Shown: in pieces, positions 1 through 62,860 of the stretch
Numbering within the stretch: position 1 is the first letter of the stretch
How the letters are laid out: every line of letters starts with the position of its first letter
Source: Macrostomum lignano
Lineage: Eukaryota
NCBI GenBank assembly: GCA_002269645.1
Contig: NIVC01000955.1
Location: forward strand, 248,001 to 312,000
Length of the DNA stretch: 64,000 nt
Direction: 5' to 3'
Translations under genes and position numbers: made by a program
The notes under the pieces: generated by a model
The model's input: only the letters and a program-made list of their open reading frames with translations
Told to the model about the DNA's origin: nothing
The model's database searches: none

Positions 1-2060
1 CTGATGCAGTGTCTGATGCAGTGTCTGATGAGGTGTATGATGCAGTGTCTGGTGAGGTGTATGATGCAGTGTCTGTTGAGGTGTCTGGTGAGATGTCTGG
101 TTAGGTGTATGATGCAGTGTCTGTTGAGGTGTATGATGCAGTGTCTGTTGAGGTGTCTGATGCAGTGTCTGGTTAGGTGTCTGATGCAGTGTCTGGTGAG
201 GTGTCTCGTGAGGTGTCTGATGCAGTGTCTGGTGAGGTGTCTGATGCAGTGTCTGATGAGGTGTATGATGCAGTGTCTGGTGAGGTGTCTGGTGAGGTGT
301 CTGGTGAGGTGTCTGATGCAGTGTCTGGTGAGGTGTCTGATGCAGTGTCTGGTGAGGTGTCTGATGCAGTGTCTGGTGAGGTGTATGATGCAGTGTCTGG
401 TGAGGTGTCTGATGCAGTGTCTGGTGAGGTGTCTGATGCAGTGTCTGGTGAGGTGTATGATGCAGTGTCTGGTGAGGTGTCTGATGCAGTGTCTGGTGAG
501 GTGTCTGATGCAGTGTCTGGTGAGGTGTCTGGTGAGGTGTCTGGTGAGGTGTCTGGTGAGGTGTTTGATGAGGTGTCTGATGCAGTGTCTGGTGAGGTGT
601 CTGATGCAGTGTCTGATGAGGTGTCTGGTGCAGTGTCTGGTGAGGTGTATGATGCAGTGTCTGTTGAGGTGTCTGGTGAGATGTCTGGTTAGGTGTATGA
701 TGCAGTGTCTGTTGAGGTGTATGATGCAGTGTCTGTTGAGGTGTCTGATGCAGTGTCTGGTTAGGTGTCTGATGCAGTGTCTGGTGAGGTGTCTCGTGAG
801 GTGTCTGATGCAGTGTCTGGTGAGGTGTCTGATGCAGTGTCTGATGAGGTGTATGATGCAGTGTCTGGTGAGGTGTCTGGTGAGGTGTCTGGTGAGGTGT
901 CTGATGCAGTGTCTGGTGAGGTGTCTGATGCAGTGTCTGGTGAGGTGTCTGATGCAGTGTCTGGTGAGGTGTATGATGCAGTGTCTGGTGAGGTGTCTGA
1001 TGCAGTGTCTGGTGAGGTGTCTGATGCAGTGTCTGGTGAGGTGTATGATGCAGTGTCTGGTGAGGTGTCTGATGCAGTGTCTGGTGAGGTGTCTGATGCA
1101 GTGTCTGGTGAGGTGTCTGGTGAGGTGTCTGGTGAGGTGTCTGGTGAGGTGTTTGATGAGGTGTCTGATGCAGTGTCTGGTGAGGTGTCTGATGCAGTGT
1201 CTGGTGAGGTGTCTGGTGCAGTGTCTGGTGAGGTGTCTGATGCAGTGTCTGGTGAGGTGCCTGGTGAGATGTCTGGTGAGGTGTATGATGCAGTGTCTGG
1301 TGAGGTGTATGATGCAGTGTCTGGTGAGGTGTCTGATGCAGTGTCTGGTGAGGTGTCTGGTGAGGTGTCTGGTTAGGTGTCTGATGCAGTGTCTGATGCA
1401 GTGTCTGATGAGGTGTATGATGCAGTGTCTGGTGAGGTGTTTGATGAGGTGTCTGATGCAGTGTCTGGTGAGGTGTCTGATGCAGTGTCTGGTGAGGTGT
1501 CTGGTGCAGTGTCTGGTGAGGTGTCTGATTCAGTGTCTGGTGAGGTGCCTGGTGAGATGTCTGGTGAGGTGTATGATGCAGTGTCTGGTGAGGTGTATGA
1601 TGCAGTGTCTGGTGAGGTGTCTGGTGAGGTGTCTGGTTAGGTGTCTGATGCAGTGTCTGATGCAGTGTCTGGTGAGGTGTATGATGCAGTGTCTGATGAG
1701 GTGTATGATGCAGTGTCTGGTGAGGTGTCTGATGCAGTGTCTGGTGAGGTGTCTGGTGAGGTGTCTGGTTAGGTGTCTGATGCAGTGTCTGGTGAGGTGT
1801 CTGGTGAGGTGTCTGGTGAGGTGTCTGATGCAGTGTCTGATGCAGTGTCTGATGAGGTGTATGATGCAGTGTCTGGTGAGGTGTCTGATGCAGTGTCTGG
1901 TGAGGTGTCTGGTGAGGTGTCTGGTTAGGTGTCTGATGCAGTGTCTGGTGAGGTGTCTGGTGAGGTGTCTGGTTAGGTGTCTGATGCAGTGTCTGATGCA
2001 GTGTCTGATGAGGTGTATGATGCAGTGTCTGGTGAGGTGTCTGGTGAGGTGTCTGGTTAG
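1..2060. repeat. 12-bp minisatellite (GTGTCTGATGCA / GTGTCTGGTGAG variants) with a 588-bp higher-order duplication
   Basis: Direct reading. The rare variant GTGTCTCGTGAG occurs at 201 and 789 (588 bp = 49 units apart). The array runs off the window start. Confidence 0.97.
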
Positions 2061-3017
2061 AAGGGGGACAGCAGAAAAATGAGGGAGGCGAGAAGGGAGA
2101 GAGGAGAGAATGGAGATTAGAGAGGTAACTGAGAAGAGACAAACCTCGTTCGAGCCGGATTGCTATTGTGAAGTTTCAAAGGACCCAAGGACCGGATGGA
2201 GAGGCTTTGCGGGCCGAATGTGGCTCACAGGTAGATTGTCAACCTCCTCTGTGTCTCTGGTGCCTCGTCAGCTGCGTCTTACTAAACCGAATTTCTAGAG
2301 AGGAAGCTTCCAGCTCGGTCTGCCGACCAGCTGTTGAGGATCTCGCTCTGTCCAGGTGCAGTCTCTCTCCGCTCCCAACCCTTCATCCCACTCGACTCGA
2401 CCTTCGCCTTCTGTTCTTCTGCCGGAAATTCAAAACAGACGTATGTAGTGTATAACTGGCCTGCGATTCCATACCTTTTCCTCTCTGTTTCGGAGTTTCC
2501 GCTTGCATCGAGTCTGATAGACCTAGGCTAGGGTATAGGTATTTTCTACGAGTATATTCCTTTTCGCTACTGAAGCCAACTGGAATGTTTATTTATGAAT
2601 ACTTACAGTATGTGGGATCTTCTTCCTGCCCAGTTTATAAATCCCGTATAGGTATCTAAGTGTCTAAACCCCATCACGATCAGCTATTTATACTCTTTAT
2701 AGTTATAAAAATATCGTAATCCCGTGCAGATCAATCATATAGCTGGGTATCACGCCAAATTATCTGGGTATACGGCGGGCCGCGTCTCATTAATATACGA
2801 GGAAGAGAAACTACGCATGACTTGTTGTTTCAAGTTTATAATAACGATTAGATAAACACGCGCAGGGAAGTGATTTTTTTGCACCACCTGGCCGCTTCTT
2901 GGATGAACTTTGCCGTTTTGCGTCTATGGATTATGAATAGGGATAGAAATAAGATATGGATACTAGAGATTCGTCACAAACAAACTCAACTGGGCCTGGG
3001 GGTTGCTTTGACCGACT

Positions 3018-17817: not shown

Positions 17818-18679
17818 TCTTGAGGCAATATCAGAGGGGCGGCGATTTTTTGGGCAATTCTGGTACACTAAGTATTTGGTGCAGACGATTCTACAATGGA
17901 TTAGTGGCACTTCTAGAAAAATGTAATTATAAAAAGATTTATAATTTTGGTGAATTGTCTCATGCAAGCGCTGGTCTGCACCCCTGCTGCAGTACAGATA
18001 GGAGAAACAGGAAAATACCGGCTTTTTCGCGGTCCTTCAGACAGGTTTCATAGCCTAATAGCTGTGAGACCAGCCCATTCAGCTGCAGCCTCCTCCCCCA
18101 TCCAAGGCCCTGATTATTCTACTCATCCAGAATGCTCACCCACACAGACCCAGCATCCCTGGCTTCATCTCTACCTTGCCTACCCCTCCCCCACCCCTCA
18201 TCTCTCGTTTCCTCTTCGCGGATGAATATTTCAAAGCCCAGCTCCCCGTTCCCCGTAAAAATGCTGAATGCCAACAGGCCTGCGGGTCCTGCAGTTTAGC
18301 TGTGTGCTTTGTTGCAAAAGCAGCAATAGCAGCAGCAGCAGAAGCAGCGGCCATGCAGAGCTGAGAGACTAAAAGAGTCCTCAAGCTGAGCCCTCGCTAT
18401 TCCTCTACTGCCCCAGCCAGTCTCTCTGCACCTGTCAATCAGGCCTTTATCGATCCGATTAACCGCCCGGTGGGCCTCAGCCAAGCCAAGCCGGGCAAAT
18501 CCATCCCGTCTTTTAGTCTACTAATTTTTACTCTGACACCTGGAGTTTCGTTTCTCCGCTGGCTATACCGGCACATTTAGACTCTAAATGCATAAGAGAT
18601 TAGTGATTGTTTCATATTTTCAGGAACAGGTGCAGGAGTCACGGAGTTGAGAAGGAAGAGAAGAGGACCGAGAACTCAT

Positions 18680-21130: not shown

Positions 21131-22275
<1,145 letters not shown>

Positions 22276-23034
22276 ATGTAACAAACTGACTAACAGCCAT
22301 CATTTCTGTTCCTGTGCTATTTCTTCCCCATTCGCATCCATGCGCTGATGCTTTCCTTCTCCAGGTTGTCAGTCAACGATCTGAGCTGTGTTGGCATATT
22401 TATTCACTGCCTAAGTTCCTCTGTCACTGCTCCGACCTCCTGCACACGCCGTGCATTGTCTTGAACAAATAAAAAACCCGTGAGATGTCACGGCAAGTCA
22501 AGAGGGAGCCACACAATTCCCTCAGATAATATCCGTGCACGTACTTGGAGCAGTTCTCATGCTCACGCATCCCACTTGTCAATTTTTTCGCACCCATAAT
22601 CTCCCCTGCTGCTCTGGCCCATTCGCGCCGTCAAGTGCGGTGAAAGCACCCGGTTTGGCTCCCACGACAGCCCCCCCACACTCTGTTGGGATTTTCTCCC
22701 CATCCGTTCAGCTGATTCACGCCACGCTCAGTGACAATTTGAGCTAGGAAATTTTTTTCGTGTGAATATTTGACTTTATCAGCGTCACAATCTCTACTGT
22801 CTACTTAGTGTGGTTTAGTAGTCAGTAGAGCGTTAAATAGGCTAAATAAAATACAAGTATAAGAAATAGCAAGTAGACTTCAGAGTGCATCCCAAGATTG
22901 ATGTAGGCTCTGTACATCTGAACTTTTCTTAGCTTGCGTGTCAACTTTGAATAAAGAAATACTTCTGCCCGATACTGAAGTCAATAAAACAGCTATCAAG
23001 TACGTATATGACCTGAGCGTTGGTTTTCTCTCTA

Positions 23035-28400: not shown

Positions 28401-31400
28401 GAATAATAATATGAATATCTACCTTGCTAGTTACTTAGTCACTGCCCAAACGCCACGTCTTTGCAGAATCAGCCTCAGGCTTGGCTGCCACATGGCCCTC
28501 TACCGATTCCCATTGGACACGCAGGTCTGCGAGATCAACATGGAAAGCTGTGAGTTCTAACTGCTGTTTTAGTAAAAGAATTTATTTCTGTTTTCATTTG
28601 GCAGACTTTCCTGTGTTTATAGATCGGTTCACAAAACAGGAGCTGATTCTTCAATGGCGCAAATCTAAACCGTTTGAAGTGAACAAAGACTTTCACCTGC
28701 CGCAGTTTGTGCTTACTAGCTGGAATACATCCAATTGCGACATACAGTACTTGTCGGGTGAGTAACCTTTGGGGTGTCAAACTGTGATGATTTTTAAATT
28801 TGAGGATATAAACTTTGGTGATGTTTAATTTTGAGGATATTCAACTTTGAGTTTGAGGATGTTTAACTTTGAGGATGTTTAACTTTGAGGATGTTTAACT
28901 TTGAGGATATAAACTTTGGTGATGTTTAATTTTGAGGATGTTTAACTTTGAGGATGTTCAACTTTGAGTTTGAGGATGTTTAACTTTGAGGATATAAACT
29001 TTGGTGATGTTTAATTTTGAGGATGTTTAACTTTGAGGATGTTCAACTTTGAGTTTGAGGATGTTTAACTTTGAGGATGTTTAACTTTGAGGATATTTAA
29101 CTTTGAGGATGTTTAACATTGAGGATGTTTAAATTTGAGGATCTAAACTCCAAGACAATGATACTCCATTGTAGTAATTATAGTAAAATCCAGATACAAC
29201 ACTAATTCGCAGAACTAAATGAGACTACTAAGCATTCAAAGCATTGCCGGCCTCTCAGTCTATTGATATCATCTGTAAGCACTTGCAGTCAGCTGACTGA
29301 CGGACATTAAGGAGCTAAAAGGGACAACTGACTGCCAGTTCAATGCATAGTCATACATAGTATTATCGATGTAGGCTAGTTTCTACCATTGCTAGTGAAA
29401 ATGTATACGACCAACTAAAACAAAAGGGAATGCGAGACGGAAAAAGCATTTCCGTAGCAACGGGAGTCGGCTGCGGTTCCAATGTAAATGGAAGCCATCA
29501 ATCTTTGCACTATACAGTGCATCAATACATTGTATTGAACAATGAATACAATAGTTTGCTAGATTTGATCCTTTGATCAGGAATGTGTCGGGACGGACAG
29601 GTACTTTTGCTGTAATTCCTGAGTGCTAGTATGATGTTAAAATGCAGCTGAAATGGCGCCCCTTGGTGCTGGCGCCCCTTGGTGCTGGCGCCCCTTGGTG
29701 CTGGCGCCCCTTGGTGCTGGCGCCCCTTGGTGCTGGCGCCCCTTGGTGCTGGCGCCCCTTGGTGCTGGCGCCCCTTGGTGCTGGCGCCCCTTGGTGCTAA
29801 AGCCCCTTGGTGCTAAAGCCCCTTGGTGCTAAAGCCCCTTGGTGCTAAAGCCCCTTGGTGCTAAAGCCCCTTGGTGCTAAAGCCCCTTGGTGCTAAAGCC
29901 CCTTGGTGCTAAAGCCCCTTGGTGCTAAAGCCCCTTGGTGCTAAAGCCCCTTGGTGCTAAAGCCCCTTGGTGCTAAAGCCCCTTGGTGCTAAAGCCCCTT
30001 GGTGCTAAAGCCCCTTGGTGCTAAAGCCCCTTGGTGCTAAAGCCCCTTGGTGCTAAAGCCCCTTGGTGCTAAAGCCCCTTGGTGCTAAAGCCCCTTGGTG
30101 CTAAAGCCCCTTGGTGCTAAAGCCCCTTGGTGCTAAAGCCCCTTGGTGCTAAAGCCCCTTGGTGCTAAAGCCCCTTGGTGCTAAAGCCCCTTGGTGCTAA
30201 AGCCCCTTGGTGCTAAAGCCCCTTGGTGCTAAAGCCCCTTGGTGCTAAAGCCCCTTGGTGCTAAAGCCCCTTGGTGCTAAAGCCCCTTGGTGCTGGCGCC
30301 CCTTGGTGCTAAAGCCCCTTGGTGCTGGCGCCCCTTGGTGCTAAAGCCCCTTGGTGCTGGCGCCCCTTGGTGCTAAAGCCCCATGGTGCTGGCGCCCCTT
30401 GGTGCTAAAGCCCCTTGGTGCTAAAGCCCCTTGGTGCTAAAGCCCCTTGGTGCTAAAGCCCCTTGGTGCTAAAGCCCCTTGGTGCTGGCGCCCCTTGGTG
30501 CTAAAGCCCCTTGGTGCTAAAGCCCCTTGGTGCTAAAGCCCCTTGGTGCTAAAGCCCCTTGGTGCTGGCGCCCCTTGGTGCTAAAGCCCCTTGGTGCTGG
30601 CGCCCCTTGGTGCTAAAGCCCCTTGGTGCTGGCGCCCCTTGGTGCTAAAGCCCCTTGGTGCTGGCGCCCCTTGGTGCTGGCGCCCCTTGGTGCTAAAGCC
30701 CCTTGGTGCTAAAGCCCCTTGGTGCTAAAGCCCCTTGGTGCTAAAGCCCCTTGGTGCTAAAGCCCCTTGGTGCTAAAGCCCCTTGGTGCTAAAGCCCCTT
30801 GGTGCTGGCGCCCCTTGGTGCTAAAGCCCCTTGGTGCTAAAGCCCCTTGGTGCTAAAGCCCCTTGGTGCTGGCGCCCCTTGGTGCTGGCGCCCCTTGGTG
30901 CTAAAGCCCCTTGGTGCTGGCGCCCCTTGGTGCTAAAGCCCCTTGGTGCTAAAGCCCCTTGGTGCTAAAGCCCCTTGGTGCTAAAGCCCCTTGGTGCTAA
31001 AGCCCCTTGGTGCTAAAGCCCCTTGGTGCTGGCGCCCCTTGGTGCTGGCGCCCCTTGGTGCTAAAGCCCCTTGGTGCTAAAGCCCCTTGGTGCTAAAGCC
31101 CCTTGGTGCTAAAGCCCCTTGGTGCTAAAGCCCCTTGGTGCTAAAGCCCCTTGGTGCTAAAGCCCCTTGGTGCTAAAGCCCCTTGGTGCTAAAGCCCCTT
31201 GGTGCTAAAGCCCCTTGGTGCTAAAGCCCCTTGGTGCTAAAGCCCCTTGGTGCTAAAGCCCCTTGGTGCTAAAGCCCCTTGGTGCTAAAGCCCCTTGGTG
31301 CTAAAGCCCCTTGGTGCTAAAGCCCCTTGGTGCTAAAGCCCCTTGGTGCTAAAGCCCCTTGGTGCTAAAGCCCCTTGGTGCTAAAGCCCCTTGGCGCTAA

Positions 31401-34400
31401 AGCCCCTTGGTGCTAAAGCCCCTAAGTCCCCAAAGAAGCGTCCTAAGTAAGGAATAATTCTGAAAAGTAATACTTGTACTACTGTAGTTCAGTAATCAAT
31501 ACGATCGACAGTGGAGCTTCAAATTAAATTAATGATCTCAACGCACTACTCGTTCTGTTCATGAAACAGTTAAAATTAGTAAATAGTTTACTGGAGTGAG
31601 AGGAGAGCTCGATTCGCACTCTCCTCGATTGACGACAATTTCCTTTCGAGTCAGTCGATCACTGCAAGCCTGACTTTCTAACAGTAAAATTAGCATTTCC
31701 CAGGGTCTTTGCCGAGATCATGTAAATATCCGATAAGCTGGGAGCGAGACACTGAACTGCCCCCCCCCCAGCTGTTTTCCTTGTTGCTGGGGTACGCATA
31801 AGACAAGAGACTCTTGAGAGAAAAGCACCCTTGGGTCTGTTTTCATTTGAGCAATTATTTATGTTTATATAAGTATAAAGTAACACTTTCACTGCAAAAT
31901 AGTTTTTTCGCACTAATATACTACGATATATATTATGTATTAATTAATTAACAACTATGAATCACGCACCCATAGCAAAATCATGCAAAGTTTGGACATT
32001 AACACCCCTACTTTAGGAGCACTGCCCAAAGGTAGGGGACTTTGAGCTCGGTTGAACACTCGGTAGGGGACTCTGAGCTCGATTGAACACTCGGTAGGGG
32101 ACTCTTGTTGGTGCTAAAGCCACCAACAAGATGCTAAAGTGTTCTTGTTTGAACACTCGGTAGGGGACTCTGAGCTCCGTTGAACACTCGGTAGTGAACT
32201 CTTGTTTGAACACTCGGTAGGGGACTCTGAGCATTGTTGAACACTCGGTAGGGGACTCTGAGCTCCGTTGAACACTCGGTAGTGGACTCTTGTTTGAACA
32301 CTCGGTAGGGGACTCTGAGCATTGTTGAACACTCGGTAGGGGACTCTGAGCATTGTTGAACACTCGGTAGGGGACTCTGAGCTCCGTTGAACACTCGGTA
32401 GTGGACTCTGAGCCCGCATGCCCTCGGTATCTTGTAAGGGTTACCTGCTACAGAGAGGTGCAAACTGGAGTGGTGATTCCTGCCGACTCGAAACTGGCTG
32501 TAACGGCCTGGTTGTCAGTGAGTGAGTGATTAAGCTTGCCGACTCAACGCCGGACAATGGCCGGACTGATAGATGCTGGCAAGGGCCAAGGGCAAGAGCC
32601 TTGAAGCCTAGCGGTTCATCAAAGTATTGATATTTGTAGGCAGCGCCTACTATCGTGTGTGTTGGGGGGTTGTTAGCGGCTGCGCCGCGTGGCTCTGCTA
32701 GCTCAACCCTTATGCGTACAATATCAAATGTGCATGGTGCGACTTTAGCCACCATTCTGACTCAGCTCAATAATTCAATAAATATACTGATCGCTATTAT
32801 TCTCGCCTGCAAGCTTTCGGCAACTATCGACTACAACAAGCAGTTTAGCCTCGTTTCACTCACTACAATATTCACTTCTCCGCAATTTTCAGGCGAGTTC
32901 CCCTGTCTGCGGGTGCACTTTGTACTTCGTCGAGTGTTTGCCGTATACCTGATCCAGTACTACGTGCCCAGCACTCTCATTGTCGTGCTGTCCTGGGTGT
33001 CCTTCTGGATCAGCATTGAAGCCGTGCCAGCACGGATATCGTTGGGTCAGTGTGTTAACCTTCCTGTGTAAACTAACTTCTCTGGATTATGAGTCGATGT
33101 TAGAAACGGCACTTTTCAGGCATGACATCAATTATCCATATCTGCAACAAATATTTTTTTAGTTTGAAGTTACGCTCGTACTCTTCTTTGGGTCCCCATA
33201 GAAAAAACTGACTTTATACTAAACCAGATAAAGGTGGAGCATGAAAAATTCAGAAGCCAGCACCGTGTCTAGGATCCGGTTTCCCGTGAACCGGAACTCT
33301 GAAGGGCTTAAGCTAAAATGACAGGTGATGAAGTGGACTAGGAAAGATGTAAGAATAGCGATATAGATTTAGAGTGCATCTGTGAAAGTGTTGCTCTCCG
33401 CAGTGGGGTAGGCAGGAATTCTAACTGGAAGGGATCGCAACCCTAAGGGGCCCCAATATTTGGTCTCTTGTTCGGCGGCTATGTCTTTTTTGGGTGGCCA
33501 TGTCCCTTGGTAGGCGGCCATGTCCCTTGGTAGGCGGCCCTGTCTCTTGTTAGACGGCCCTGTCTCTTGTTAGACGGCCCTGTCTCTTGTTAGGCGGCCC
33601 TGTCTCTTGTTAGGCGGCCCTGTCTCTTGTTAGGCGGCCCTGTCTCTTGTTAGGCGGCCCTGTCTCTTGTTAGGCGGCCCTGTCTCTTGTTAGGCGGCCC
33701 TGTCCCTTGGTAGGCGGCCCTGTCTCTTGTTAGGCGGCCCTGTCTCTTGTTAGGCGGCCTTACCCTGTCTCTTAGCCCGGTGGATTTCACGTCCACGAGG
33801 GGCGAATGTTGAGCTCCTGTTGAGTTTATCTCTTTCATTATGTTTTTGGAGGTGCGCAATTTTTGTGGAGGCGACTGAGGGAGGGGAGGCCGCGGCCCCT
33901 GACTCCCTTGACTACCATTGTTCAAAATCTTGGCCCTGTAGTAACCTTTACCAAATCTATGCTCGAATTCAGGCGTGATGACCGTCCTGTCAATGACCAC
34001 ACAGTCCATGGGCCTGTGGATGACGCTGCCAAAAGCGTCTTACATCAAAGCCATCGACATCTGGATGGGCGTCACAGTGATGTATGTGTTCAGCGCGATG
34101 CTCGAATTCGCCATGGTCAACACCATGGCTAGAAATGAGATCCGGCGTGTCACCAGGCGAATTCGAAAGGCGGCGAAAAGATCGATGAATGGCAACGCGC
34201 AGGAAGGAGACACCCAGGATCCGTTCATGTCGCCTCTGATGGTGAGCGAGTCCGGGCCTGACTTGGAACCTCCTACCCCCGATTCTACAACCTGCTACCC
34301 CCTATTCTACAACCTACTACCCCCCGATTCCACAACCTCCTACCCCCGATTCCACAACCTGCTACTCCCGATTCTACAACCTGCTACCCCCTATTCTACA

Positions 34401-35245
34401 ACCTACTACCCCCGATTCCACAACCTCCTACCCCCGATTCCACAACCTGCTACTCCCCGATTCTACAACCTGCTACCCCCTATTCTACAACCTGCTACCC
34501 CCTATTCCACAGCCTCCTACCCCCGATTTTACAACCTGCTACCCCCCGATTCCACAACCTCCTACCCCCGATTCCACAACCTGCTACTCCCCGATTCTAC
34601 AACCTGCTACCCCCTATTCTACAACCTGCTACCCCCTATTCCACAGCCTCCTACCCCCGATTCTACAACCTGCTACCCCCTATTCTACAACCTGCTACCC
34701 CCTATTCCACAGCCTCCTACCCCCGATTCCACAACCTGCTACTCCCCGATTCTACAACCTGCTACCCCCTATTCTACAACCTACTACCCCCCGATTCCAC
34801 AACCTCCTACCCCCGATTCCACAACCTGCTACCCCCTATTCTACAACCTGCTACCCCCTATTCCACAGCCTCCTACCCCCTATTCTACAACCTGCTACCC
34901 CCTATTCTACAACCTGCTACCCCCTATTCCACAGCCTCCTACCCCCGATTTTACAACCTGCTAACCCCCGATTCCACAACCTGCTACTCCCCGATTCTAC
35001 AACCTGCTACCCCCTATTCTACAACCTGCTACCCCCGATTCTGCAACCAGCTACCCCCCCCCCATTTCCCTCCTATAACGCAGGCCAAGAAGCTGGTCAA
35101 TGAATACACATACGGCGACTGGAAGACCTGGGCCCCGAATTCACGTCAGATCGCGCGAAAAATTGACAAATTCTCTCGCGTTCTGTTCCCGCTTAGTTTC
35201 AGCATTTTCTTCACCGGCTACTGGTGTCACTTCATCTTTTTCTGA
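25409..35245 (+). CDS. Cys-loop ligand-gated chloride channel subunit, glycine receptor/GluCl-like. Exons 25409-25476, 27320-27621, 28467-28549, 28623-28757, 32893-33045, 33973-34241, 35084-35245
   Basis: All junctions are GT-AG and phase-compatible. Motifs: [42 protein letters not shown], Cys-loop [15 protein letters not shown], loop-C pair [13 protein letters not shown]1 [25 protein letters not shown] anion filter and M2 [28 protein letters not shown]4 [14 protein letters not shown]. Exon sizes 68, 83 and 153 bp match the conserved GABA-A/GlyR exon pattern. Confidence 0.96.
27775..27962 (-). mobile_element. SINE copy 2 (5'-truncated), in channel intron
   Basis: Reverse complement is near-identical to 44350-44524 (CCCAACCCCCAAGGCACAGTGAAGTGTACATGCC..ACGATAAATAAA..GGGC). 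Confidence 0.8.
27997..28270 (+). mobile_element. SINE copy 3, head-to-head with copy 2
   Basis: Degenerate A box CAGCTTAGTGGT (28000) and B box GATTCGATTCT (28039), followed by body and core aligning to copy 1. Confidence 0.72.
28795..29130. repeat. 16-bp minisatellite (GATGTTTAACTTTGAG), intronic
   Basis: Direct reading (period 28861 to 28877). Confidence 0.93.
29655..31424 (-). repeat. Satellite B inverted: 16-bp CCCCTTGGTGCT+GGCG or +AAAG, intronic
   Basis: Direct reading. Two unit variants are interspersed. Confidence 0.98.
32030..32415. repeat. About 26/31-bp minisatellite (GAACACTCGGTAGGGGACTCTGAGC...)
   Basis: Direct reading. Confidence 0.9.
33500..33760. repeat. 20-bp minisatellite (GGCGGCCCTGTCTCTTGTTA), intronic
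   Basis: Direct reading. Confidence 0.93.
34272..35058. repeat. About 21-bp C-rich minisatellite (CCCCGATTCTACAACCTGCTA) in the last channel intron
   Basis: Direct reading. Confidence 0.93.
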
Positions 35246-51909: not shown

Positions 51910-54440
51910 GACTATCCTACCTACTGATCTCTTTTTTAGCACCATCTAATAACACATTGAGCCAAATTCCTTCCTAGCTTGTCAAGTGTGGCAGTCTTAA
52001 TGTGTGGTGGTCTTGGTCCAACACCTCTATATCCTAGGAGCTAGAAACAGCCAATCGGCCTAAAAGTTGAGAGAAATTAAAGTTACCTCTCCTTGTGTTG
52101 TATAAGCTAATTAAAGCTATAATAGGCATAGCCACTTTAGTAATTAGTTCAGTAATGGCCACTATAGTTTAGAAACATTACATACCATTTTATTTTTAGG
52201 CTTATTTTGCCAAATATATGAATAGAAATAAACAAATCCTTTGGGCTTTGTTAAAGATAAAAGTGGTCAAGAATTTTACTAAAATGGTTAATATGCTTTT
52301 ACCAAACCAAAGAGAAAAGTAGACTTTTAAAAGAATAGGTGGCACTCTTTACTTTTAAAGTATAATAATGTAATGCCATTAATTAGTCATTAAGTATAAA
52401 AATGCCTAAATTATATTGCCTACTATTTAAATAGCTATATACCATAGGCCCTAATAAAACATGTTTATAGTTATGAATCAATCACAAACAAATCTTTCAA
52501 TCTACGCCATACTGCGCACATTTGAATGAACAGCAAATTATTGTACTAGGCCTAAGAAAATAATTGAACGAGCGATTGTGCGAAAGTAAAAGATTACCCA
52601 TTTTTTATCATTCGTTTGACTTTGAAAATTATTTTGTAGTAATTTATATTTGCGTTAAATAACCTAATATATTCTGATTCAATGAATAAAGAGCACGACA
52701 ATGCTATGCATAGACCCTACCTACAATACAAGCAACGACAGTAGTACTCAAGCACAACAACAACACTTTCAAGACCTCGTGCTTGCTAACGGAGTCGAAA
52801 TTTCTTGTTCGTGAATTCTTTCTATGAAATGAGGTGAAATAACACTTCGTGGACTAGTTCTACTTCTAAGGATATAGCACCTCAAACATTTTCACGCACA
52901 ACTCTTAGTATAATATTTCGAAAGAGTCATAATTAGGGAAATTTTCTTTAATGCATTGCATTCGGTTATTTAGGATTATTTTAGTACATGTAGTAGTACA
53001 TATAAAACGTGAAATCCATCTGTAGAAAAAAGCTCACGTTGGTCATCATATAATTTTATATCTTGCCTAAAAAAGAGTAATGGTGGAACCTTCTGCACCA
53101 TTCGCTCACGGCTGGTTACTGATGTTGATGCTTTTATTATTTTTTTACGCGCAGCAACGCGCTGTAGGCCCAAACGTACGAATTCGTACGTAGATAACAT
53201 GCGATCGGTTTTAGTTTCGGGCCGGTTGTCTGCCCCGTCACTGCCCGTTATATATGTTGCTGTTCTAAAGCTCTACGCCTGTTCTAATAGGAGCGTGCAA
53301 TGCCAATCCTGTGAATCAGTTAATTTGACCGATTATTTTCACACGGGAAGCGTGGGCAACCCGCAGATCAGCTTAGGGAAGGGCTCTGCCGCTGGATATA
53401 TTGGGGGCTATACTGCCAGGGGCATAAAGCCCGAGAGACCCAGATTGGGGCTAGGACTCCATGGCTCCGCTGAATAACCTTATTGGGCGCTACAACCCCA
53501 AGTCCATGGACAAAGACACCGCCAACCCATAGTGGAATCAGGGGGACGGGTGCAAAGATGGTCCACCCAAGCCACGCCCCAACGACAAGTCCCGAGTGCG
53601 CGCGTGCAAAAAGATTGGAAACGAAAAACTTTTTGAGTTTTTCTGGAAAGCGGTCCGAGAGCAGGAAACTCGAAGTCTACGGAAATAGCTTTAAGATTGG
53701 AACGAGTCTGGACAGCTTATTTTCCAAGGGCGAGTCTCCTGTAAGGAGGCGGCAAGGTACGAGAAGCTCCCCCTATAGGGCTGCAAGCCAAGGCTTTTTC
53801 ACTATACCCAGCTCAAATAAGCCCAAGCCAAGGGGTGGGAGAAGGGGCACCATGGAGCAAGGGACACCGGACTCAGCCGGTATTCCCCGATTCGGGACGA
53901 ACATCAACCCCAGGACACCAATCCACTGTCAGAGATGAGAGCCAAGACACAATAAGCAGGGAGACAACCAGAGGAGCCAGCAGATGGACCAAGGGAGAGC
54001 AAGATGGACCAGAAGGGCAGAGCTCATAACTTTAAAGATTGGGCGGCTGAATTGCCAGGGATAAAACACAAAGCTTATAAAAGCACAAAGGAATAAAAAC
54101 AATAGAGAGGAGCACCTGAACCCTTATTCTGGGGCTCAGCCTCAGGGCTGGCATTCAACTGGGCTCTACCGTACATTTTTGTGAATGGTCGTCTTTCCTG
54201 CAGTCCCGATCTAGCCGCACTGCAGTCCAGAGTCATAATCACTCCAGGTACACCCCCCCCCTAAACCAATTGGCAGGGCCGAAATAATAGAAAAATAGAG
54301 GATCTTTTTTTGGATGTGTACATCACCTCCAGTGAGGACTTACTTGACTTACTTGACTTAGCTGCAGGGGGCTCCGTGCGTCCGGAAACAGCGAGGAGGC
54401 GTTGCCGCCCATTTCGCTAACCCCTGGCGACCACGGGCAG

Positions 54441-58139
<3,699 letters not shown>

Positions 58140-60040
58140 TCCGGGGATTCCACGAGTGGTCCGCGCAGCTTCCTACCGGCTCAAGGCGAGTTGTGCAGGA
58201 GAGCTGCCTCTTCTGCCTCGCCGATATCACCAGGCTCCAGCTCCATGGGCTCCTCCCGGATGGTCTCCATGGTCGAGGGCGATGTCGCCACCAGGGCGGC
58301 ATTTTCGCTCTCGGCCCGGTTTTCCGGGGGGGGGGCGCAGTGGTGACACTGGGCTGGGTGTTGCTGCGGTTGTGGGCCTTGGCGGTGTCCAGCAGCTGCT
58401 TCGCGCGCTGAGTTAGACCAGAGCGGATAGTGTTCCGGGCGGGTTTCCGGCCCTTTCCACGTCCGCCTGTTGCTGCAGCTTTCGCGGCTTTCCCTCTGAC
58501 GGGGTCCACGTCCTCGGAGGGGTCGTGGCGACCGGGAGCTTCTTTTCCTGGGCGTTTCCGCCCGGCAGAGCCCCCGATCACCCGCTTACGCTTCTCCGGG
58601 GGCGGTGGACGGGTGGCGTCAGACTCAAAGCTAAAGAGCTGAATCTGCAACAGCCCGACAGAGATGACGGACATGTCCGGATAGCGGAGCATCCAGCTAT
58701 CCGACAGTCCAAGAATGGCCGTGAAACCATCTCCGCCCGGCTCGTAGGTGAACTACGACACCGTTGGCCGGTAGCTCCGGGTTGGAAGCCACCAGCAGGT
58801 GACGCAGCTCGTCGGCCTTGGTGATGCAGCTGCGAGCCGGAATCCAGGCACGGTGCCAGTGTGTCCGGGGTCGCTCGTCCTCCCTGTAGATGAACAGGTT
58901 CTCTAGCTCCGTACCCCAGTCGAAGGTTTTCAGCAGCTCGAGGAGCTGCTGTCCTGACTGGCTGTCGGCGGGCTGGATATGGAGGGCTTGGTCCTCGACT
59001 TTCGTCTTTTGGACTGGAATGGTGGTGCCGCTCAAGGCCATCTTGACCAGGTGGGAGTCCAACCTGCGCCAGATAAGGTCGAGCTGTTCGGCCGTAAGGG
59101 GCGTCTCCTGGCCTTGGATAACCAGGGCCGGCTGCCTCTTGGCCATAGCCGCGTAGGTTCGCTTCGGCTTTGTGGTTTGGCCAGCGCCCCCCGCTTTGGA
59201 TCCCTCCACAGCCGTGGGAGCTTCCACACGGGCAGAGGTCCGGTCACGGGAGGGGCCAGCCGCACCAGGAGCTTCGGCGGCACCTGACGCATCTGACCGG
59301 CGCGCGGAGTCCACCCCCTTGTCGGATGTCGGCTCCTCCGCGGGGTTCGCAGAGTTACCGGCACCCTCCTCGGAGGTGGGCGGAGGGGCGGCTTTCGCAT
59401 TCCTCCGTTCCTCCGCTTTGCGCTGGAGAAAGGCTTTGTAGCGAGCAATGCTACGGGCCTTCTTTTTCGAAATCTGAGGTCTGCTGTCTTGTCCAGCCAC
59501 TCTGGTATTATCCTGAGCGGCGGCAGCGGCAGATTGAGAGGCACCGGGGGTTCCGGTGTTGCGAATGTCCGGCTGGGCCGCGGTATCAACCTCGGTTGGT
59601 GCTCCAGCAGCCTCGGACGTGATGGATGTAAGTGAATACTCCATGAGTCGCTGAAAGGCGAATGGGGACTAGAGGTGAGAAGCTGCTGGGCCGTAACCCC
59701 AAACCCAACAACCAGGCCAAGAGTTAGCGACCGGGGGTGGCTTAAGCCCGTACCGGCCCGACCGCTAGCAACCGAGAAACTCCTCGGCTAAGAGCCCGGC
59801 TTGGAAAAACCAGAGGCCGAACCAAAGGACCATCAGCACGGTACTACACTGGGCCCTTGAGGGAAGCAGGAGGACTGCCTCCGGAGCCTGCGGACTGGCC
59901 GCATACCCTGTTAAGGTCAGAGGGTGGTACCTGTTCCTCAGAGCCGTGGCCAGAGGTACCTGATACGCGCAGGTTCACTTCCGGGCGGAGCCCGTACCCA
60001 ACTTGGCCAGCAGGCCACGGGTGGGTTGCCGCCGCCGGAG

Positions 60041-60245
60041 CCCAGTCAGTCCAGCAGCCCTAGAGCTGCCTTGAACACATGCGGGGCGTGAACCCCTGGG
60101 TCGGCTTGCGAGTCAGCTTGGAGAGAGTTCTCCTGCCATTCCTGCACCAGAATAGAGGGGGTGCAGGTGTGTAGGATCGCAGACCTTAGCTTGTAGGCCT
60201 AGTCTGTCTCATGCTACACAGGCGTGCTGAACCCGCCTTGCATGC
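60041..60245 (-). ncRNA. HDV/CPEB3-like self-cleaving ribozyme at the LINE 5' end
   Basis: P1 GCAUGC (60245-40)/GCAUGU (60082-77) with a G1-U wobble. P2 CCCAG (60100-96)/CUGGG (60045-41). P3 GGG/CCC. L3 UUCACGC. P1.1 G-U as in CPEB3. P4 GGCAGCU-CUAG-GGCUGCU. J4/2 C(60049)UGA. J1/2 is 139 nt and structured. Confidence 0.82.
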
Positions 60246-60850
60246 TCCGGTGAGGACACTTAGATATGGAGCTACCCGAAGGGCAGGTCAATTGGATTGT
60301 GCACAACCCGAGAAATGCCGCCAGAAGGCAGCCGGGATAAAAACAGTCAGAGACCGTCTTACATAACACTAGTTACATACCAAGTAATTTCCCATTCTGG
60401 TTCGCTTACACAATACAATGTATTCTTCGTAAAAAGATTCGATGCAGTAAGTATTCATTTCCATAAGTCATATAGCCACAAATTTGGAAAAATTAGTAGA
60501 CACAATTTGAGCCGTCTGCAATTGACTTTGTTAGTAGGTTTTAACATATCCAGGGTGAAATTAAATGCTGCAATTAGGATGCAGCGCAAAAATTTTATTA
60601 GCAAATAATAATTATTGTTGGATATTGGATTACTGTTTTAGAATTTCTTGGATTGGACACTATATCGAATAGTTAGAGTCCCGGTTAATTTGTGAATATA
60701 GTTAAATCCCATGCATTTATTAAAAATGCAGCCCTGATGTACATATTAAAAATTTCAATGTCGTTCGTTAAATTTTCAGGCCAACGGCCAGTACTGTGGA
60801 TACTAATAGCACTGGACCGTGTTTGGTTGCACCGCGGTGATCCTTGCTGA

Positions 60851-61899: not shown

Positions 61900-62860
61900 T
61901 TGCAAGCCTTGACATGTCAGCAATCCCCCCCCCCACAAGCCTTAACATATCAACTCCCCCTTGACATCTCAGCGATGCTCCCATAAGCCTTGAAATCTTA
62001 AAAAATCTGTCTACTTTCTAACCCTAACCCTAACCCTAACCCTAACCCTAACCCTAAAGCATTGAAATTTCAGTAATTCTCTCTAAGAGTCATTATAGCA
62101 CTACTACAGCATTATAGCGATTCCCTGCAAGCCTCGACATCGTAGGGATTCCCAAATGAATCTCTTAACTTCGACATGAAGCTTCTTTTTTTTACATTAC
62201 GCTTTTTCTATCAGCGATCCCTCCCGTGAGGAGCCAACAAATAATGTAATAACTTTTTTCCAATAAACTACATGTAGCTTCTGACATTAGCCTTGACATC
62301 TCATTTATTCCCCCGTGAGCCTTGACATCTCAGCTATAGATAGATAGATAGATAGATTCCCCTCGTAAGCCTTGACATGTCAGCGATGCCCCCCCATAAA
62401 CCTTGAAATCTAAAAAATCCCCTGTTAACCTTGAAACGCGCTAAAATCTAACCCTCAACCCAAACCTGACGTAAACCTAACTTTCACCCAACCTAAAGCC
62501 TTGAAATCACAGCAATTCTTCTTCCCTAAGCCTTGGCATTTAAGTGATTCCTTCTTTAAGAATCACAGCACTATAACGATTCCCTCCAAGCTTTGACATC
62601 GTAGCAATTCCCAAATGAATCTTTTAACTTTGACATGACTTTTATTTTATGTATACATAGTGCTCCTTTTATTTTTACATGACTCTTCTTCTATCAGCGC
62701 CCCCCCCACCGTGGCAAGCCAACAAAGAATGCAATAAAAAAACTTAAGTAAAGTACATGTACTTTGAAGTAGCTTCTGACTTTTGCTTTAACATCTCAGA
62801 AACCCCCCTGTAATCTCAGTTATTCTCTGTGAGCCTTGACGTCTCAGTGATTCTCCCCAG
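61900..62860 (+). repeat. Diverged tandem duplication (about 430-470 bp) built of AGCCTTGACATCTCAGC subunits
   Basis: 61900-62330 aligns by eye to 62360-62800. Same family as 23035-23365. Confidence 0.75.
62018..62057. repeat. Interstitial telomeric repeat (CCCTAA) x6.7
   Basis: Direct reading. Confidence 0.95.

What the first reader, a model, noticed from the sequence alone, without database searches (positions are those of the whole stretch)
60041..60257. Complete HDV/CPEB3-like ribozyme whose cleavage site coincides with the TSD-defined 5' end of a LINE
Seen: on the minus strand every element of the nested double pseudoknot is present in order: P1 GCAUGC/GCAUGU (6 bp, G1-U wobble at the scissile position), P2 CCCAG/CUGGG (extendable by GCCG/CGGC), P3 GGG/CCC, L3 UUCACGC, a single C-G P1.1 with a U-U mismatch, a 7-bp P4 hairpin and J4/2 C-U-G-A with the catalytic C at 60049. 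The 139-nt J1/2 is full of hairpins (AGGCG/CGCCU, UGUGUAG/CUACACA, CCUGCACC/GGUGCAGG). Independently, the 13-bp TSD GTCCTCAC(C/T)GGAG ends at 60245, which is G1. Established: HDV-like ribozymes process the 5' ends of R2, RTE, L1Tc/Ingi, SART and Baggins (Loa-clade) RNAs; CPEB3 has L3 UUCACGU and the same weak P1.1. Inference: this family releases its 5' end by self-cleavage from read-through transcripts, using a CPEB3-like variant with a 6-bp P1 and a large J1/2 domain, in a probably non-insect host. The ribozyme looks intact although ORF2 is dead.
Basis: partly seen in the sequence, partly recalled or inferred. Interest (0 to 1): 0.9.

Follow-up and report, generated by a model that had tools for sequence, protein, structure and literature searches.

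The report
HDV-like ribozyme at flatworm LINE start
The first ~205 bases of a dead jumping gene (a LINE retrotransposon, apparently in the flatworm Macrostomum lignano) fold into a hepatitis-delta-type self-cutting RNA whose cut site is exactly the element's first base. This is a well-supported new example of a trick already known from other LINEs, not a new kind of thing.

Summary
On the minus strand, 60245..60041 carries every element of the nested double pseudoknot at the stated coordinates. These are a 6-bp P1 starting with a G·U pair, a 139-nt J1/2, P2 with its GCCG/CGGC extension, P3 GGG/CCC, L3 UUCACGC, a 1-bp P1.1, a 7-bp P4, and J4/2 CUGA with C60049.

A generic HDV descriptor hits only this site in the 128 kb of both strands. 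It gives at most about 0.04 hits per 128 kb of composition-matched random sequence.

G60245 is the last base of a 13-bp target-site duplication around a 5.9-kb LINE (ORF1, endonuclease, reverse transcriptase, RNase H). At least four frameshifts break that LINE.

One diverged relative was found, Logan contig L001 (ORF1 43-58% identical, ORF2 63-79%). It starts exactly at the homologous G and keeps the whole fold. It has compensatory changes in P1, P2 and P1.1, an unrelated P4 hairpin, and a similarly closed multi-helix J1/2 domain.

The host is Macrostomum lignano or close kin.

Caveats:
- Only two sequences are available.
- Rfam gives no hit.
- L001 departs from the canon (G1-C pair, J4/2 CUGC).
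- The CPEB3-like L3 and weak P1.1 belong to this copy, not the family.
- Cleavage is untested.

Verdict: a real new member of a known kind, of moderate interest.

The parts
60245..60257 (-). 5' copy of the target-site duplication, GTCCTCACCGGAG. Its last base, G60245, is also the putative G1 of the ribozyme.
60240..60245 (-). P1 5' strand, GCAUGC. The predicted cleavage is 5' of G60245.
   Evidence: It pairs with 60082-60077. In L001 it reads GCCUGC with GCAGGC, so A-U becomes C-G (a compensatory change) and G·U becomes G-C.
60101..60239 (-). J1/2 peripheral domain, 139 nt. It has a closing helix (60236-60226 with 60117-60108), a long conserved hairpin (60220-60168, containing the invariant GCUAAGGUCU), a second hairpin CCUGCACC/GGUGCAGG (60167-60141) and a third hairpin (60133-60120).
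   Evidence: It folds as a closed multi-branch domain in both the window (z = -3.0) and L001 (z = -2.35). Of 30 consensus pairs, 8 keep pairing through changes on both sides.
60096..60105 (-). P2 5' strand, CCCAG (60100-60096), plus the extension GCCG (60105-60102).
   Evidence: The second pair changes from C-G to U-A in L001.
60083..60095 (-). P3 GGG, L3 UUCACGC and P3' CCC.
   Evidence: P3 is invariant in L001, where L3 is UCUCCGU. The U at L3 position 1 and the C-G at positions 5-6 are kept.
60077..60082 (-). P1 3' strand, GCAUGU.
60071..60076 (-). J1/4, GUUCAA. G60076 pairs with C60090 to form P1.1, and U60075 faces U60091. The CAA is conserved in L001.
   Evidence: In L001 the P1.1 pairs are U-A and C-G.
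60053..60070 (-). P4 hairpin, 7 bp with a CUAG loop.
   Evidence: L001 has an unrelated 11-bp hairpin at the same place.
60046..60052 (-). J4/2, GGA-CUGA. The putative catalytic cytosine is C60049.
   Evidence: L001 reads CUGC(U) here.
60034..60045 (-). P2 3' strand CUGGG (60045-60041), internal loop CUC, and extension CGGC (60037-60034).
59645..60033 (-). Remainder of the 5' UTR. It shares conserved blocks with L001, for example CAGGUACCUCU and UAAGCCACCCCCGG.
58336..59644 (-). ORF1, with no Pfam domain, broken by a frameshift near 58700-58737.
54465..58139 (-). ORF2, comprising AP-endonuclease, reverse transcriptase, RNase H and a C-terminal CCHC motif. It is split over three frames, with frameshifts near 57201-57279, 56767-56779 and 55598-55637.
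54340..54360 (-). 3' terminal tandem repeat, (TAAGTCAAG)2 TAA.
   Evidence: L001 ends with a single TAAGTCAA.
54327..54339 (-). 3' copy of the target-site duplication, GTCCTCACTGGAG.

Best explanation
The first ~205 nt of this LINE's sense RNA (window 60245->60041, minus strand) form an HDV-like self-cleaving ribozyme.

**Proposed mechanism**
- When the element is transcribed as part of a longer host transcript, the RNA folds into the nested double pseudoknot. P1, P1.1 and P4 form one stack, and P2 and P3 form the other.
- A stable, closed 139-nt J1/2 domain holds the far ends of P1 and P2 together.
- C60049 in J4/2, with Mg2+, catalyses scission 5' of G60245. This yields an element RNA that begins with a 5'-OH at G1.
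- The RNA is then translated, possibly with the help of the folded ribozyme, and copied by target-primed reverse transcription. New full-length insertions therefore begin exactly at G1, next to the target-site duplication.

**What is shown**
- The fold is present.
- It is improbable by chance.
- Its pairings are conserved through compensatory changes in a diverged relative.
- G1 coincides with the element's 5' end in two independent elements.

**What is inferred**
- Catalysis.
- Co-transcription from upstream promoters.
- The 'pinch' role of J1/2.

**This particular copy**
It is a decayed insertion (frameshifted ORFs, 1 mismatch in 13 in the duplication) in Macrostomum lignano or a close relative. 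Its ribozyme core still looks canonical, but its activity is uncertain.
For: 1. **All elements are at the stated coordinates**.
2. **The match is rare.** The descriptor gives a single hit in 128 kb. It gives at most 1 hit per 3 Mb of composition-matched random sequence.
3. **G1 is the element's 5' end.** A duplication of 12-13 bp flanks a 5.9-kb LINE and ends at G60245.
4. **A relative keeps the fold.** L001 is 43-58% identical in ORF1 and 63-79% in ORF2. Its contig starts at the column of G60245. It matches the descriptor from nt 1 to 236 once the last J4/2 position is freed. The chance rate for that is about 0.004 per 13 kb.
5. **The pairings covary.**
   - On 20 core pairs, 97.5% of cells are paired, against 35-41% when the partners are slid.
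   - Pairs with changes on both sides occur in P1 (A-U to C-G), P2 (C-G to U-A) and P1.1 (C-G to U-A).
   - The U·U mismatch becomes C-G.
   - The 9 substituted positions would keep all 20 pairs with probability about 1.5e-5 if placed at random.
6. **P4 is a hairpin of unrelated sequence in the two elements**.
7. **J1/2 is a closed domain in both.** It folds on its own with a closing helix 3-4 nt after P1 and 7-8 nt before P2, with 8 compensatory pairs. This matches the J1/2 helix shown to activate large HDV-like ribozymes (PMC4908430).
8. **There are precedents.**
   - HDV-like ribozymes cleave at the 5' end of R4, Dong, baggins, L1Tc and RTE, and at the 5' end of Drosophila R2 (PMC3774820; PMC6765202).
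   - The active L1Tc ribozyme has a single-bp P1.1 (PMC3185411).
   - The two P1 strands lie up to ~700 nt apart in R2.
Against: - No Rfam family, including the HDV, CPEB3 and drz models, matches either the window region or L001, even at E <= 10.
- Only two sequences are available, so covariation statistics are weak. The shuffle control reaches the observed value in 66 of 500 shuffles.
- L001 has the intact ORFs, yet it departs from the canonical core at two places thought to matter. It has a G1-C pair instead of G·U, and J4/2 CUGC(U) without the usual adenosines.
- P1 is 6 bp, not the usual ~7.
- This copy has only 1 bp of P1.1 next to a U·U mismatch.
- The pseudoknot-free minimum-energy fold extends P4 by GUUCA/UGGAC. 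That pairing would sequester both the P1.1 G and C60049.
- There are no biochemical or RNA-end data.
Confidence: 0.8

Rival explanations
1. The fold is real and conserved, but the 5' end at G1 is set mainly by an internal promoter that starts transcription there. The structured RNA would then serve as a translation or IRES element, a binding site for the element's proteins, or protection of the 5' end. Self-cleavage would be absent or secondary.
For: - In L1Tc the same 77 nt act as both internal promoter and ribozyme, and the cleavage site coincides with the transcription start (PMC3185411; abstracts).
- HDV-like ribozymes of R2 and L1Tc are proposed to act like an IRES, and the R2 protein binds the extended ribozyme (PMC6765202).
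- The most conserved stretch of the region is in J1/2 (GCUAAGGUCU), not in the catalytic L3.
- L001 lacks the G·U wobble and the J4/2 adenosines.
Against: - The exact HDV topology, with L3 U...CG and a C in J4/2 followed by U-G, is preserved. Compensatory changes occur in the two pseudoknot helices P1 and P2.
- A promoter or IRES role does not by itself demand that specific topology.
- No promoter evidence was obtained.
- The two roles are not mutually exclusive.
Confidence: 0.12
2. This is a chance resemblance. A GC-rich, highly structured 5' UTR happens to be drawable as a double pseudoknot.
For: - There is no Rfam hit.
- The descriptor was written after the fact.
- GC-rich sequence pairs easily. 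The whole-region fold has a z-score of only -1.37.
Against: - The descriptor's chance rate is at most about 0.04 per 128 kb. G1 also falls on the duplication boundary.
- The same fold sits at the same aligned positions in L001, with every one of 9 substitutions preserving or improving pairing (p about 1.5e-5).
- Sliding the partners drops pairing to 35-41%.
- Nine metagenome sequences share the 19-nt core pattern by chance. None of them completes the motif.
Confidence: 0.04
3. The family has a working ribozyme, but this copy's ribozyme is a dead relic. Mutations after insertion, such as those giving the U·U in P1.1 or the alternative P4 extension, would have inactivated it.
For: - The copy carries at least 4 frameshifts and 1 mismatch in 13 in the duplication.
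- P1.1 is weaker here than in L001.
- An alternative pairing could trap C60049.
Against: - All of P1, P2, P3 and P4 are intact, and J4/2 is canonical CUGA.
- Ribozymes with a single-bp P1.1 are active, as in L1Tc. CPEB3 is another example, from my own knowledge.
Confidence: 0.35

Closest known systems
[quoted passage not shown] 2011; Sanchez-Luque et al. 2011; PMC3774820, PMC3185411, PMC6765202)
   Same: - A nested double pseudoknot sits at the extreme 5' end in sense orientation, with the cleavage site at the element's first nucleotide.
- P3 is 3 bp, L3 is 7 nt, P1.1 is 1-2 bp, and there is a C in J4/2.
- J1/2 can be very long (216-498 nt in silkmoth R2).
- A TSD or junction lies adjacent to G1.
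   Different: - The host element is an APE + RT + RNase H, two-ORF LINE of a free-living flatworm. I found no such case in the searched literature. Planarian R2 is known, but it cleaves at -28 in the rRNA.
- P1 is 6 bp in both elements, not ~7.
- J1/2 is a conserved, closed multi-helix domain rather than a poorly conserved loop.
- There is no sequence-level match to the Rfam models.
drz-Agam-2-1 and other 'large' HDV-like ribozymes with a structured J1/2 (P1.2) domain (Webb et al. 2016, PMC4908430)
   Same: A stable helix closes the J1/2 insert a few nucleotides from the far ends of P1 and P2. This is the geometry shown to speed cleavage by up to about 1000-fold.
   Different: - Here the insert is a three- or four-way junction of 139-164 nt, not a single helix.
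- Its activating role is inferred, not measured.
Mammalian CPEB3 ribozyme
   Same: From my own knowledge, not tested here: the L3 is almost identical (UUCACGY) and P1.1 is a single C-G pair next to a U·U mismatch.
   Different: - There is no Rfam CPEB3 match.
- It lies in a LINE 5' UTR, not a CPEB3 intron.
- The resemblance is absent from the relative L001 (L3 UCUCCGU, 2-bp P1.1), so it is convergence or copy-level drift, not kinship.
Twister-variant ribozymes at the 5' end of Perere-3 (RTE) in Schistosoma mansoni (PMC8501958)
   Same: A flatworm LINE uses a 5' self-cleaving ribozyme, with the TSD directly next to the cleavage site.
   Different: - It belongs to a different ribozyme class (twister versus HDV-like).
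- In Perere-3 the TSD supplies part of P1. Here the whole ribozyme lies inside the element.

Membership tests
HDV-like self-cleaving ribozymes | Nested double pseudoknot, with strands in the order P1-J1/2-P2-P3-L3-P3'-P1'-(P1.1)-P4-J4/2-P2' | tested here: met
   window; L001. On 20 pairs, 97.5% of cells are paired, against 35-41% when partners are slid.
HDV-like self-cleaving ribozymes | Cleavage site at the first nucleotide of P1, normally a G1 in a G·U wobble | tested here: inconclusive
   The window has G60245·U60077. L001 has G1-C. The position is right in both, but the wobble is not conserved. Cleavage itself was not tested.
HDV-like self-cleaving ribozymes | 3-bp P3 closed by a ~7-nt L3 with a conserved U at position 1 and C-G at positions 5-6, and P1.1 (1-2 bp) between L3 and the nucleotides just 3' of P1 | tested here: met
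   The window has GGG/UUCACGC/CCC with P1.1 C-G. L001 has GGG/UCUCCGU/CCC with P1.1 U-A and C-G.
HDV-like self-cleaving ribozymes | Catalytic cytosine at the start of J4/2 (C-N-R-A before the P2 3' strand) | tested here: met
   The window has C60049-U-G-A followed by CUGGG. In L001 the aligned C-U-G is followed by C(U), so the A is not conserved.
HDV-like self-cleaving ribozymes | Helices supported by compensatory substitutions in relatives | tested here: met
   P1, P2 and P1.1 each have one pair changed on both sides. P4 is wholly different but still a hairpin. The probability of keeping all pairs under random substitution is 1.5e-5. This rests on one relative only.
HDV-like self-cleaving ribozymes | Match to a curated covariance model (Rfam HDV, CPEB3, drz-Agam, HDV-F-prausnitzii and others) | tested here: not met
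   There is no hit at gathering score in the window, none at E <= 10 in 59900-60400, and none in L001 1-600. These ribozymes have only about five conserved nucleotides and are usually found with descriptors (PMC4870747). The 139-nt insert also splits the model. This is therefore a weak negative.
HDV-like self-cleaving ribozymes | Mg2+-dependent self-scission giving 2',3'-cyclic phosphate and 5'-OH ends, abolished by mutating the catalytic C | not testable with these tools
   This needs in vitro transcription and cleavage assays.
LINE 5'-end processing ribozymes | Ribozyme in sense orientation at the extreme 5' end, with the cleavage site at the first nucleotide of full-length copies | tested here: met
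   The duplication ends at G60245. The L001 contig begins at the homologous G. ORF1 starts 600 nt downstream on the same strand.
LINE 5'-end processing ribozymes | The element is co-transcribed from an upstream host promoter and released by cleavage | not testable with these tools
   No RNA data are available. The nature (DNA or RNA) of the run behind L001 could not be established.
CPEB3 ribozyme family | Sequence and structure homology to the mammalian CPEB3 intronic ribozyme | tested here: not met
   There is no Rfam CPEB3 match. The L3 and P1.1 similarity is absent in L001. The genomic context is different.

The most novel reading that the evidence does not exclude
The ribozyme is a composite 5' module with two unusual properties.
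- The 140-165-nt J1/2 junction, which is more conserved in places than the catalytic loop (invariant GCUAAGGUCU hairpin), would do two jobs. It would act as the 'pinch' that activates a short 6-bp-P1 core. It would also be a specific recognition site, for example for the element's own ORF1 or ORF2 protein, or an internal promoter or IRES.
- The intact relative's core, with a G1-C pair and J4/2 CUGC lacking the A-minor adenosines, would be fully active. That would widen the accepted sequence rules for HDV-like catalysis.
Probability: 0.25. Interest if true: 0.6.

Novelty: new member of a known kind. Interest (0 to 1): 0.45.

Why it matters
- It adds a LINE lineage that carries RNase H, from a free-living flatworm, to the list of retrotransposons that define their 5' end with an HDV-like ribozyme. 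Macrostomum is a regeneration and stem-cell model with a very repeat-rich genome.
- Flatworm LINEs would then be known to use at least two ribozyme classes for the same job: twister variants in Schistosoma Perere-3, and HDV-like here and in planarian R2.
- The family offers a natural pair of cores for testing how much the HDV consensus can bend and what large J1/2 domains contribute. One core is canonical (G·U, CUGA). The other is non-canonical (G-C, CUGC).
- It also shows that Rfam models miss such ribozymes, so annotation of this genome's repeats would not flag them.

Tried and rejected
- **Rfam.** Three searches (window at gathering score; 59900-60400 and L001 1-600 at E <= 10) gave no ribozyme family. 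The only results were spurious sub-threshold hits on the GC-rich P4 of L001.
- **More copies inside the window.** Self-BLAST of the element found none. tblastn with the L001 ORFs hit only this element.
- **More relatives by ORF1 protein search.** This gave only P0001 (the source of L001) and the UniRef M. lignano chimeric model P0122.
  - P0122 has no DNA on record.
  - Its N-terminus does not cover the 5' UTR.
- **Metagenome DNA scans.**
  - A conserved J1/2 pattern gave 0 hits.
  - A core pattern gave 9 loci. These are 4 distinct GC-rich sequences, apparently bacterial, with no homology in the flanks and no complete motif.
- **RT homologues at ~40% identity, tried as a clade survey.** L012-L014, from metagenomes, are unrelated LINEs, some with an ORF1 of a different kind, cut at or near their 5' ends. 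None gave a descriptor hit. P0002 (58% identity, L002) is an RT-only 1.7-kb contig.
- **LINE clade (I, Loa, Nimb and so on).** It could not be assigned without reference sequences.
- **Key papers.** The Ruminski 2011 and Webb & Luptak 2011 papers are not held. Their content is cited only through papers that quote them.
Full report
**1. What is in the sequence**

On the minus strand, the region 60257->60034 reads as follows:

- Target-site duplication: GTCCTCACCGGAG (60257-60245).
- P1 5' strand: GCAUGC (60245-60240).
- J1/2: 139 nt (60239-60101).
- P2 extension: GCCG (60105-60102), followed by the unpaired A60101.
- P2 5' strand: CCCAG (60100-60096).
- P3 5' strand: GGG (60095-60093).
- L3: UUCACGC (60092-60086).
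- P3 3' strand: CCC (60085-60083).
- P1 3' strand: GCAUGU (60082-60077).
- J1/4: GUUCAA (60076-60071).
- P4: GGCAGCU-CUAG-GGCUGCU (60070-60053).
- J4/2: GGA-CUGA (60052-60046), with C60049.
- P2 3' strand: CUGGG (60045-60041), followed by the loop CUC.
- P2 extension: CGGC (60037-60034).

The pseudoknot-free minimum-energy fold recovers P2 with its extension, P3, P4 and a separate closed J1/2 domain. It leaves P1 free, as expected for a helix that is pseudoknotted with P2.

**2. The element it belongs to**

- GTCCTCACYGGAG occurs exactly twice in the window, at 60245-60257 and 54327-54339, both on the minus strand.
- Between the two copies lies a 5.9-kb LINE, which is 60% G+C in a flank of 40-46% G+C.
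- The LINE carries these parts:
  - ORF1, with no Pfam domain.
  - An AP-endonuclease domain.
  - A reverse transcriptase domain.
  - An RNase H domain.
  - A C-terminal CCHC motif.
  - A 3' end of (TAAGTCAAG)2 TAA.
- Compared with an intact relative, ORF1 has at least one frameshift and ORF2 at least three. The copy is dead.
- G60245 is the last base of the duplication and also G1 of the ribozyme. The base after the 3' copy of the duplication is also G, so the duplication is 12 or 13 bp. Either reading puts the element's first base at G1.

**3. Is it more than chance?**

I wrote a generic descriptor with these requirements:

- P1 of 6-7 bp starting with G.
- J1/2 of at most 200 nt (250 nt in the later scans).
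- P2 of at least 5 bp.
- A 3-bp Watson-Crick P3.
- A 7-nt L3 of form UNNNCGN.
- At least the first P1.1 pair.
- A P4 hairpin.
- J4/2 of form C-N-R-A.

The results were:

| Sequence scanned | Hits |
|---|---|
| Window, both strands (128 kb) | 1 (this site) |
| 3 Mb Markov sequence, window composition | 0 |
| 3 Mb Markov sequence, LINE composition | 1 |
| 3 Mb Markov sequence, 5' UTR composition | 0 |

That is at most about 0.04 chance hits per 128 kb, before asking that G1 fall on the duplication boundary. The descriptor was written with the candidate in view, so the rate is indicative only.

**4. Independent comparative test**

*The relative.* A protein search with ORF1 found one relative, P0001. 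It lies on a 6,492-nt Logan contig, L001, from run ERR14788467. L001 is a full-length element of the same family with intact ORFs. Its ORF1 is 43-58% identical and its ORF2 63-79% identical to the window's pieces.

*The 5' end.* The contig starts exactly at the column of G60245. It ends about 530 nt beyond a 3' end that reads ...CUGCAGCUAAGUCAA, as in the window.

*Structure-guided comparison of the two cores:*

| Part | Window | L001 |
|---|---|---|
| P1 5' strand | GCAUGC | GCCUGC |
| J1/2 length | 139 nt | 163 nt |
| P2 extension, then linker | GCCG, A | GCCG, C |
| P2 5' strand | CCCAG | CUCAGA |
| P3 5' strand | GGG | GGG |
| L3 | UUCACGC | UCUCCGU |
| P3 3' strand | CCC | CCC |
| P1 3' strand | GCAUGU | GCAGGC |
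| P1.1 nucleotides of J1/4 | GU | AG |
| Rest of J1/4 | UCAA | GCAA |
| P4 | 7-bp hairpin | 11-bp hairpin of unrelated sequence |
| Between P4 and the catalytic C | GGA | G |
| J4/2 from the catalytic C | CUGA | CUGC |
| P2 3' strand | CUGGG | UCUGAG |
| Loop, then P2 extension | CUC, CGGC | CAA, CGGC |

*Pair counts on 20 core pairs.*

- 97.5% of cells are paired, against 35-41% when the 3' partners are slid by 1-3 columns.
- One pair each in P1 (A-U to C-G), P2 (C-G to U-A) and P1.1 (C-G to U-A) changed on both sides.
- The scissile G·U becomes G-C.
- The U·U of P1.1 becomes C-G.

*Significance.*

- Nine of the 40 paired positions differ between the two elements. Nine random substitutions would leave all 20 pairs standard with probability about 1.5e-5.
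- With the last J4/2 position freed, the descriptor hits L001 at 1-236. The chance rate for that is about 0.004 per 13 kb.
- With only two sequences, the column-shuffle control is necessarily weak (66 of 500).

**5. The J1/2 domain**

- In both elements J1/2 folds on its own into a closed multi-branch domain. The z-scores are -3.0 and -2.35.
- A closing helix starts 3-4 nt after P1 and ends 7-8 nt before P2. In the window it is 60236-60226 with 60117-60108.
- Inside the domain there is a long hairpin (60220-60168) and one or two further hairpins.
- The consensus fold has 30 pairs, and 8 of them keep pairing through changes on both sides. These include pairs of the closing helix.
- This is the geometry that Webb et al. 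showed to activate large HDV-like ribozymes, by 'pinching' the far ends of P1 and P2 together (PMC4908430).
The other two hairpins are confirmed.
- A 10-nt stretch of the long hairpin, GCUAAGGUCU, is invariant between the two elements, although L3 differs at 3 of 7 positions.

**6. Host**

- A profile search with ORF1 returned a UniRef protein of Macrostomum lignano, P0122.
- P0122 is a chimeric gene model. It contains an internally deleted copy of this LINE that is 81-96% identical to the window's copy at the protein level.
- The window also carries animal gene fragments, from a Cys-loop receptor and an LRR protein. It is dense with minisatellites.
- The window therefore comes from M. lignano or a very close relative (Platyhelminthes, Macrostomorpha).
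- L001 comes from an unidentified, probably related, organism.

**7. Comparison with what is known**

- HDV-like ribozymes that cleave at the element's 5' end are established for R4, Dong, baggins, L1Tc and RTE, and for R2 in Drosophila; most other R2s cleave upstream in the 28S rRNA gene (PMC3774820; PMC6765202; PMC3185411).
- Very long J1/2 inserts are known. They are 216-498 nt in silkmoth R2, and the P1 strands lie up to ~700 nt apart in honeybee R2.
- The active L1Tc ribozyme has a single-bp P1.1.
- In flatworms, planarian R2 has such a ribozyme, cleaving at -28 in the rRNA. Schistosoma Perere-3 uses twister variants next to its TSD (PMC8501958).
- I found no paper linking HDV-like ribozymes with Macrostomum, or with a flatworm LINE other than R2.
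- No Rfam model matches. That is usual for this family, which has about five conserved nucleotides. Here the model is also split by the J1/2 insert.
- The resemblance to CPEB3 (L3 UUCACGY, a single C-G P1.1 beside U·U) is recalled from my own knowledge. It applies only to the window copy, not to L001. It is not evidence of kinship.

**8. Weak points**

- There are only two sequences.
- There are no biochemical or RNA-end data.
- L001, the intact element, lacks the G·U wobble and the J4/2 adenosines. Either those features are dispensable here or the family's activity differs from the canon.
- P1 is 6 bp in both elements.
- In the window copy an alternative extension of P4, GUUCA 60076-60072 with UGGAC 60053-60049, could trap the P1.1 G and C60049.
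- An internal promoter that starts at G1, as in L1Tc, cannot be excluded. It would be compatible with the fold.
- L001's start at G1, combined with its read-through at the 3' end, would be direct evidence for the RNA 5' end if the run is RNA-seq. I could not establish that.

**9. Verdict**

This is a genuine HDV-like ribozyme fold under selection, placed so that cleavage would create the LINE's 5' end.
- It is a new member of a known kind: a new host phylum and LINE lineage, a 6-bp P1, and a conserved multi-helix J1/2.
The mechanism and its association with LINE 5' ends are well established.

Noticed in passing
window 60168-60220 (-), and L001 about 26-78: The long hairpin inside J1/2 contains a 10-nt stretch, GCUAAGGUCU, that is invariant between the two elements. 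The catalytic loop L3 differs at 3 of 7 positions. This may be a protein-binding or tertiary-contact site.
   Followed up: partly
window 60049-60076 (-): The pseudoknot-free minimum-energy fold extends P4 by pairing GUUCA (60076-60072) with UGGAC (60053-60049). That pairing would sequester the P1.1 G and the putative catalytic C60049, giving a possible inactive alternative conformation.
   Followed up: no
L001 1-6492: The contig begins exactly at the ribozyme's G1 but runs about 530 nt past the LINE's 3' end into unrelated sequence. This asymmetry would fit an assembly of RNA reads (a cleaved 5' end with 3' read-through). The type of run ERR14788467 could not be checked.
   Followed up: no
window 1-64000: The window has an extreme density of minisatellites: 71 Tandem Repeats Finder rows. 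Examples are 9-2055 (24-nt unit x85), 29658-31423 (16-nt unit x110), 16594-17820 (13-nt unit x93) and 21131-22294 ((AACT)n). The 692-aa 'ORF' at 4..2082 is just the first array.
   Followed up: partly
window 62018-62057: (CTAACC)6.7 is an interstitial telomere-type (TTAGGG) repeat. It lies about 1.8 kb from the LINE's 5' end.
   Followed up: no
window 33975-34964 (+) and 6323-7201 (-): Two host gene fragments are present. One is a neurotransmitter-gated ion-channel transmembrane region (Pfam E = 6e-11). The other is a leucine-rich-repeat protein (E = 5e-18).
   Followed up: no
window 54340-54360 (-) and 60258-60262 (-): The element ends in (TAAGTCAAG)2 TAA, and the target site upstream of the duplication reads ..CTAAGT. 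This microhomology with the 3' repeat could have primed reverse transcription.
   Followed up: no
window 59645-60033 (-), and L001 262-547: The 5' UTR downstream of the ribozyme keeps several perfectly conserved blocks, such as CAGGUACCUCU and UAAGCCACCCCCGG, in otherwise diverged sequence. There may be further functional RNA, such as a translation element, between the ribozyme and ORF1.
   Followed up: no
P0122 (UniRef, Macrostomum lignano): This annotated 'reverse transcriptase domain-containing protein' is a chimeric gene model. It fuses an internally deleted copy of this LINE (pieces of ORF1, RT and the 3' end) to a tropomyosin-like coiled-coil gene.
   Followed up: partly
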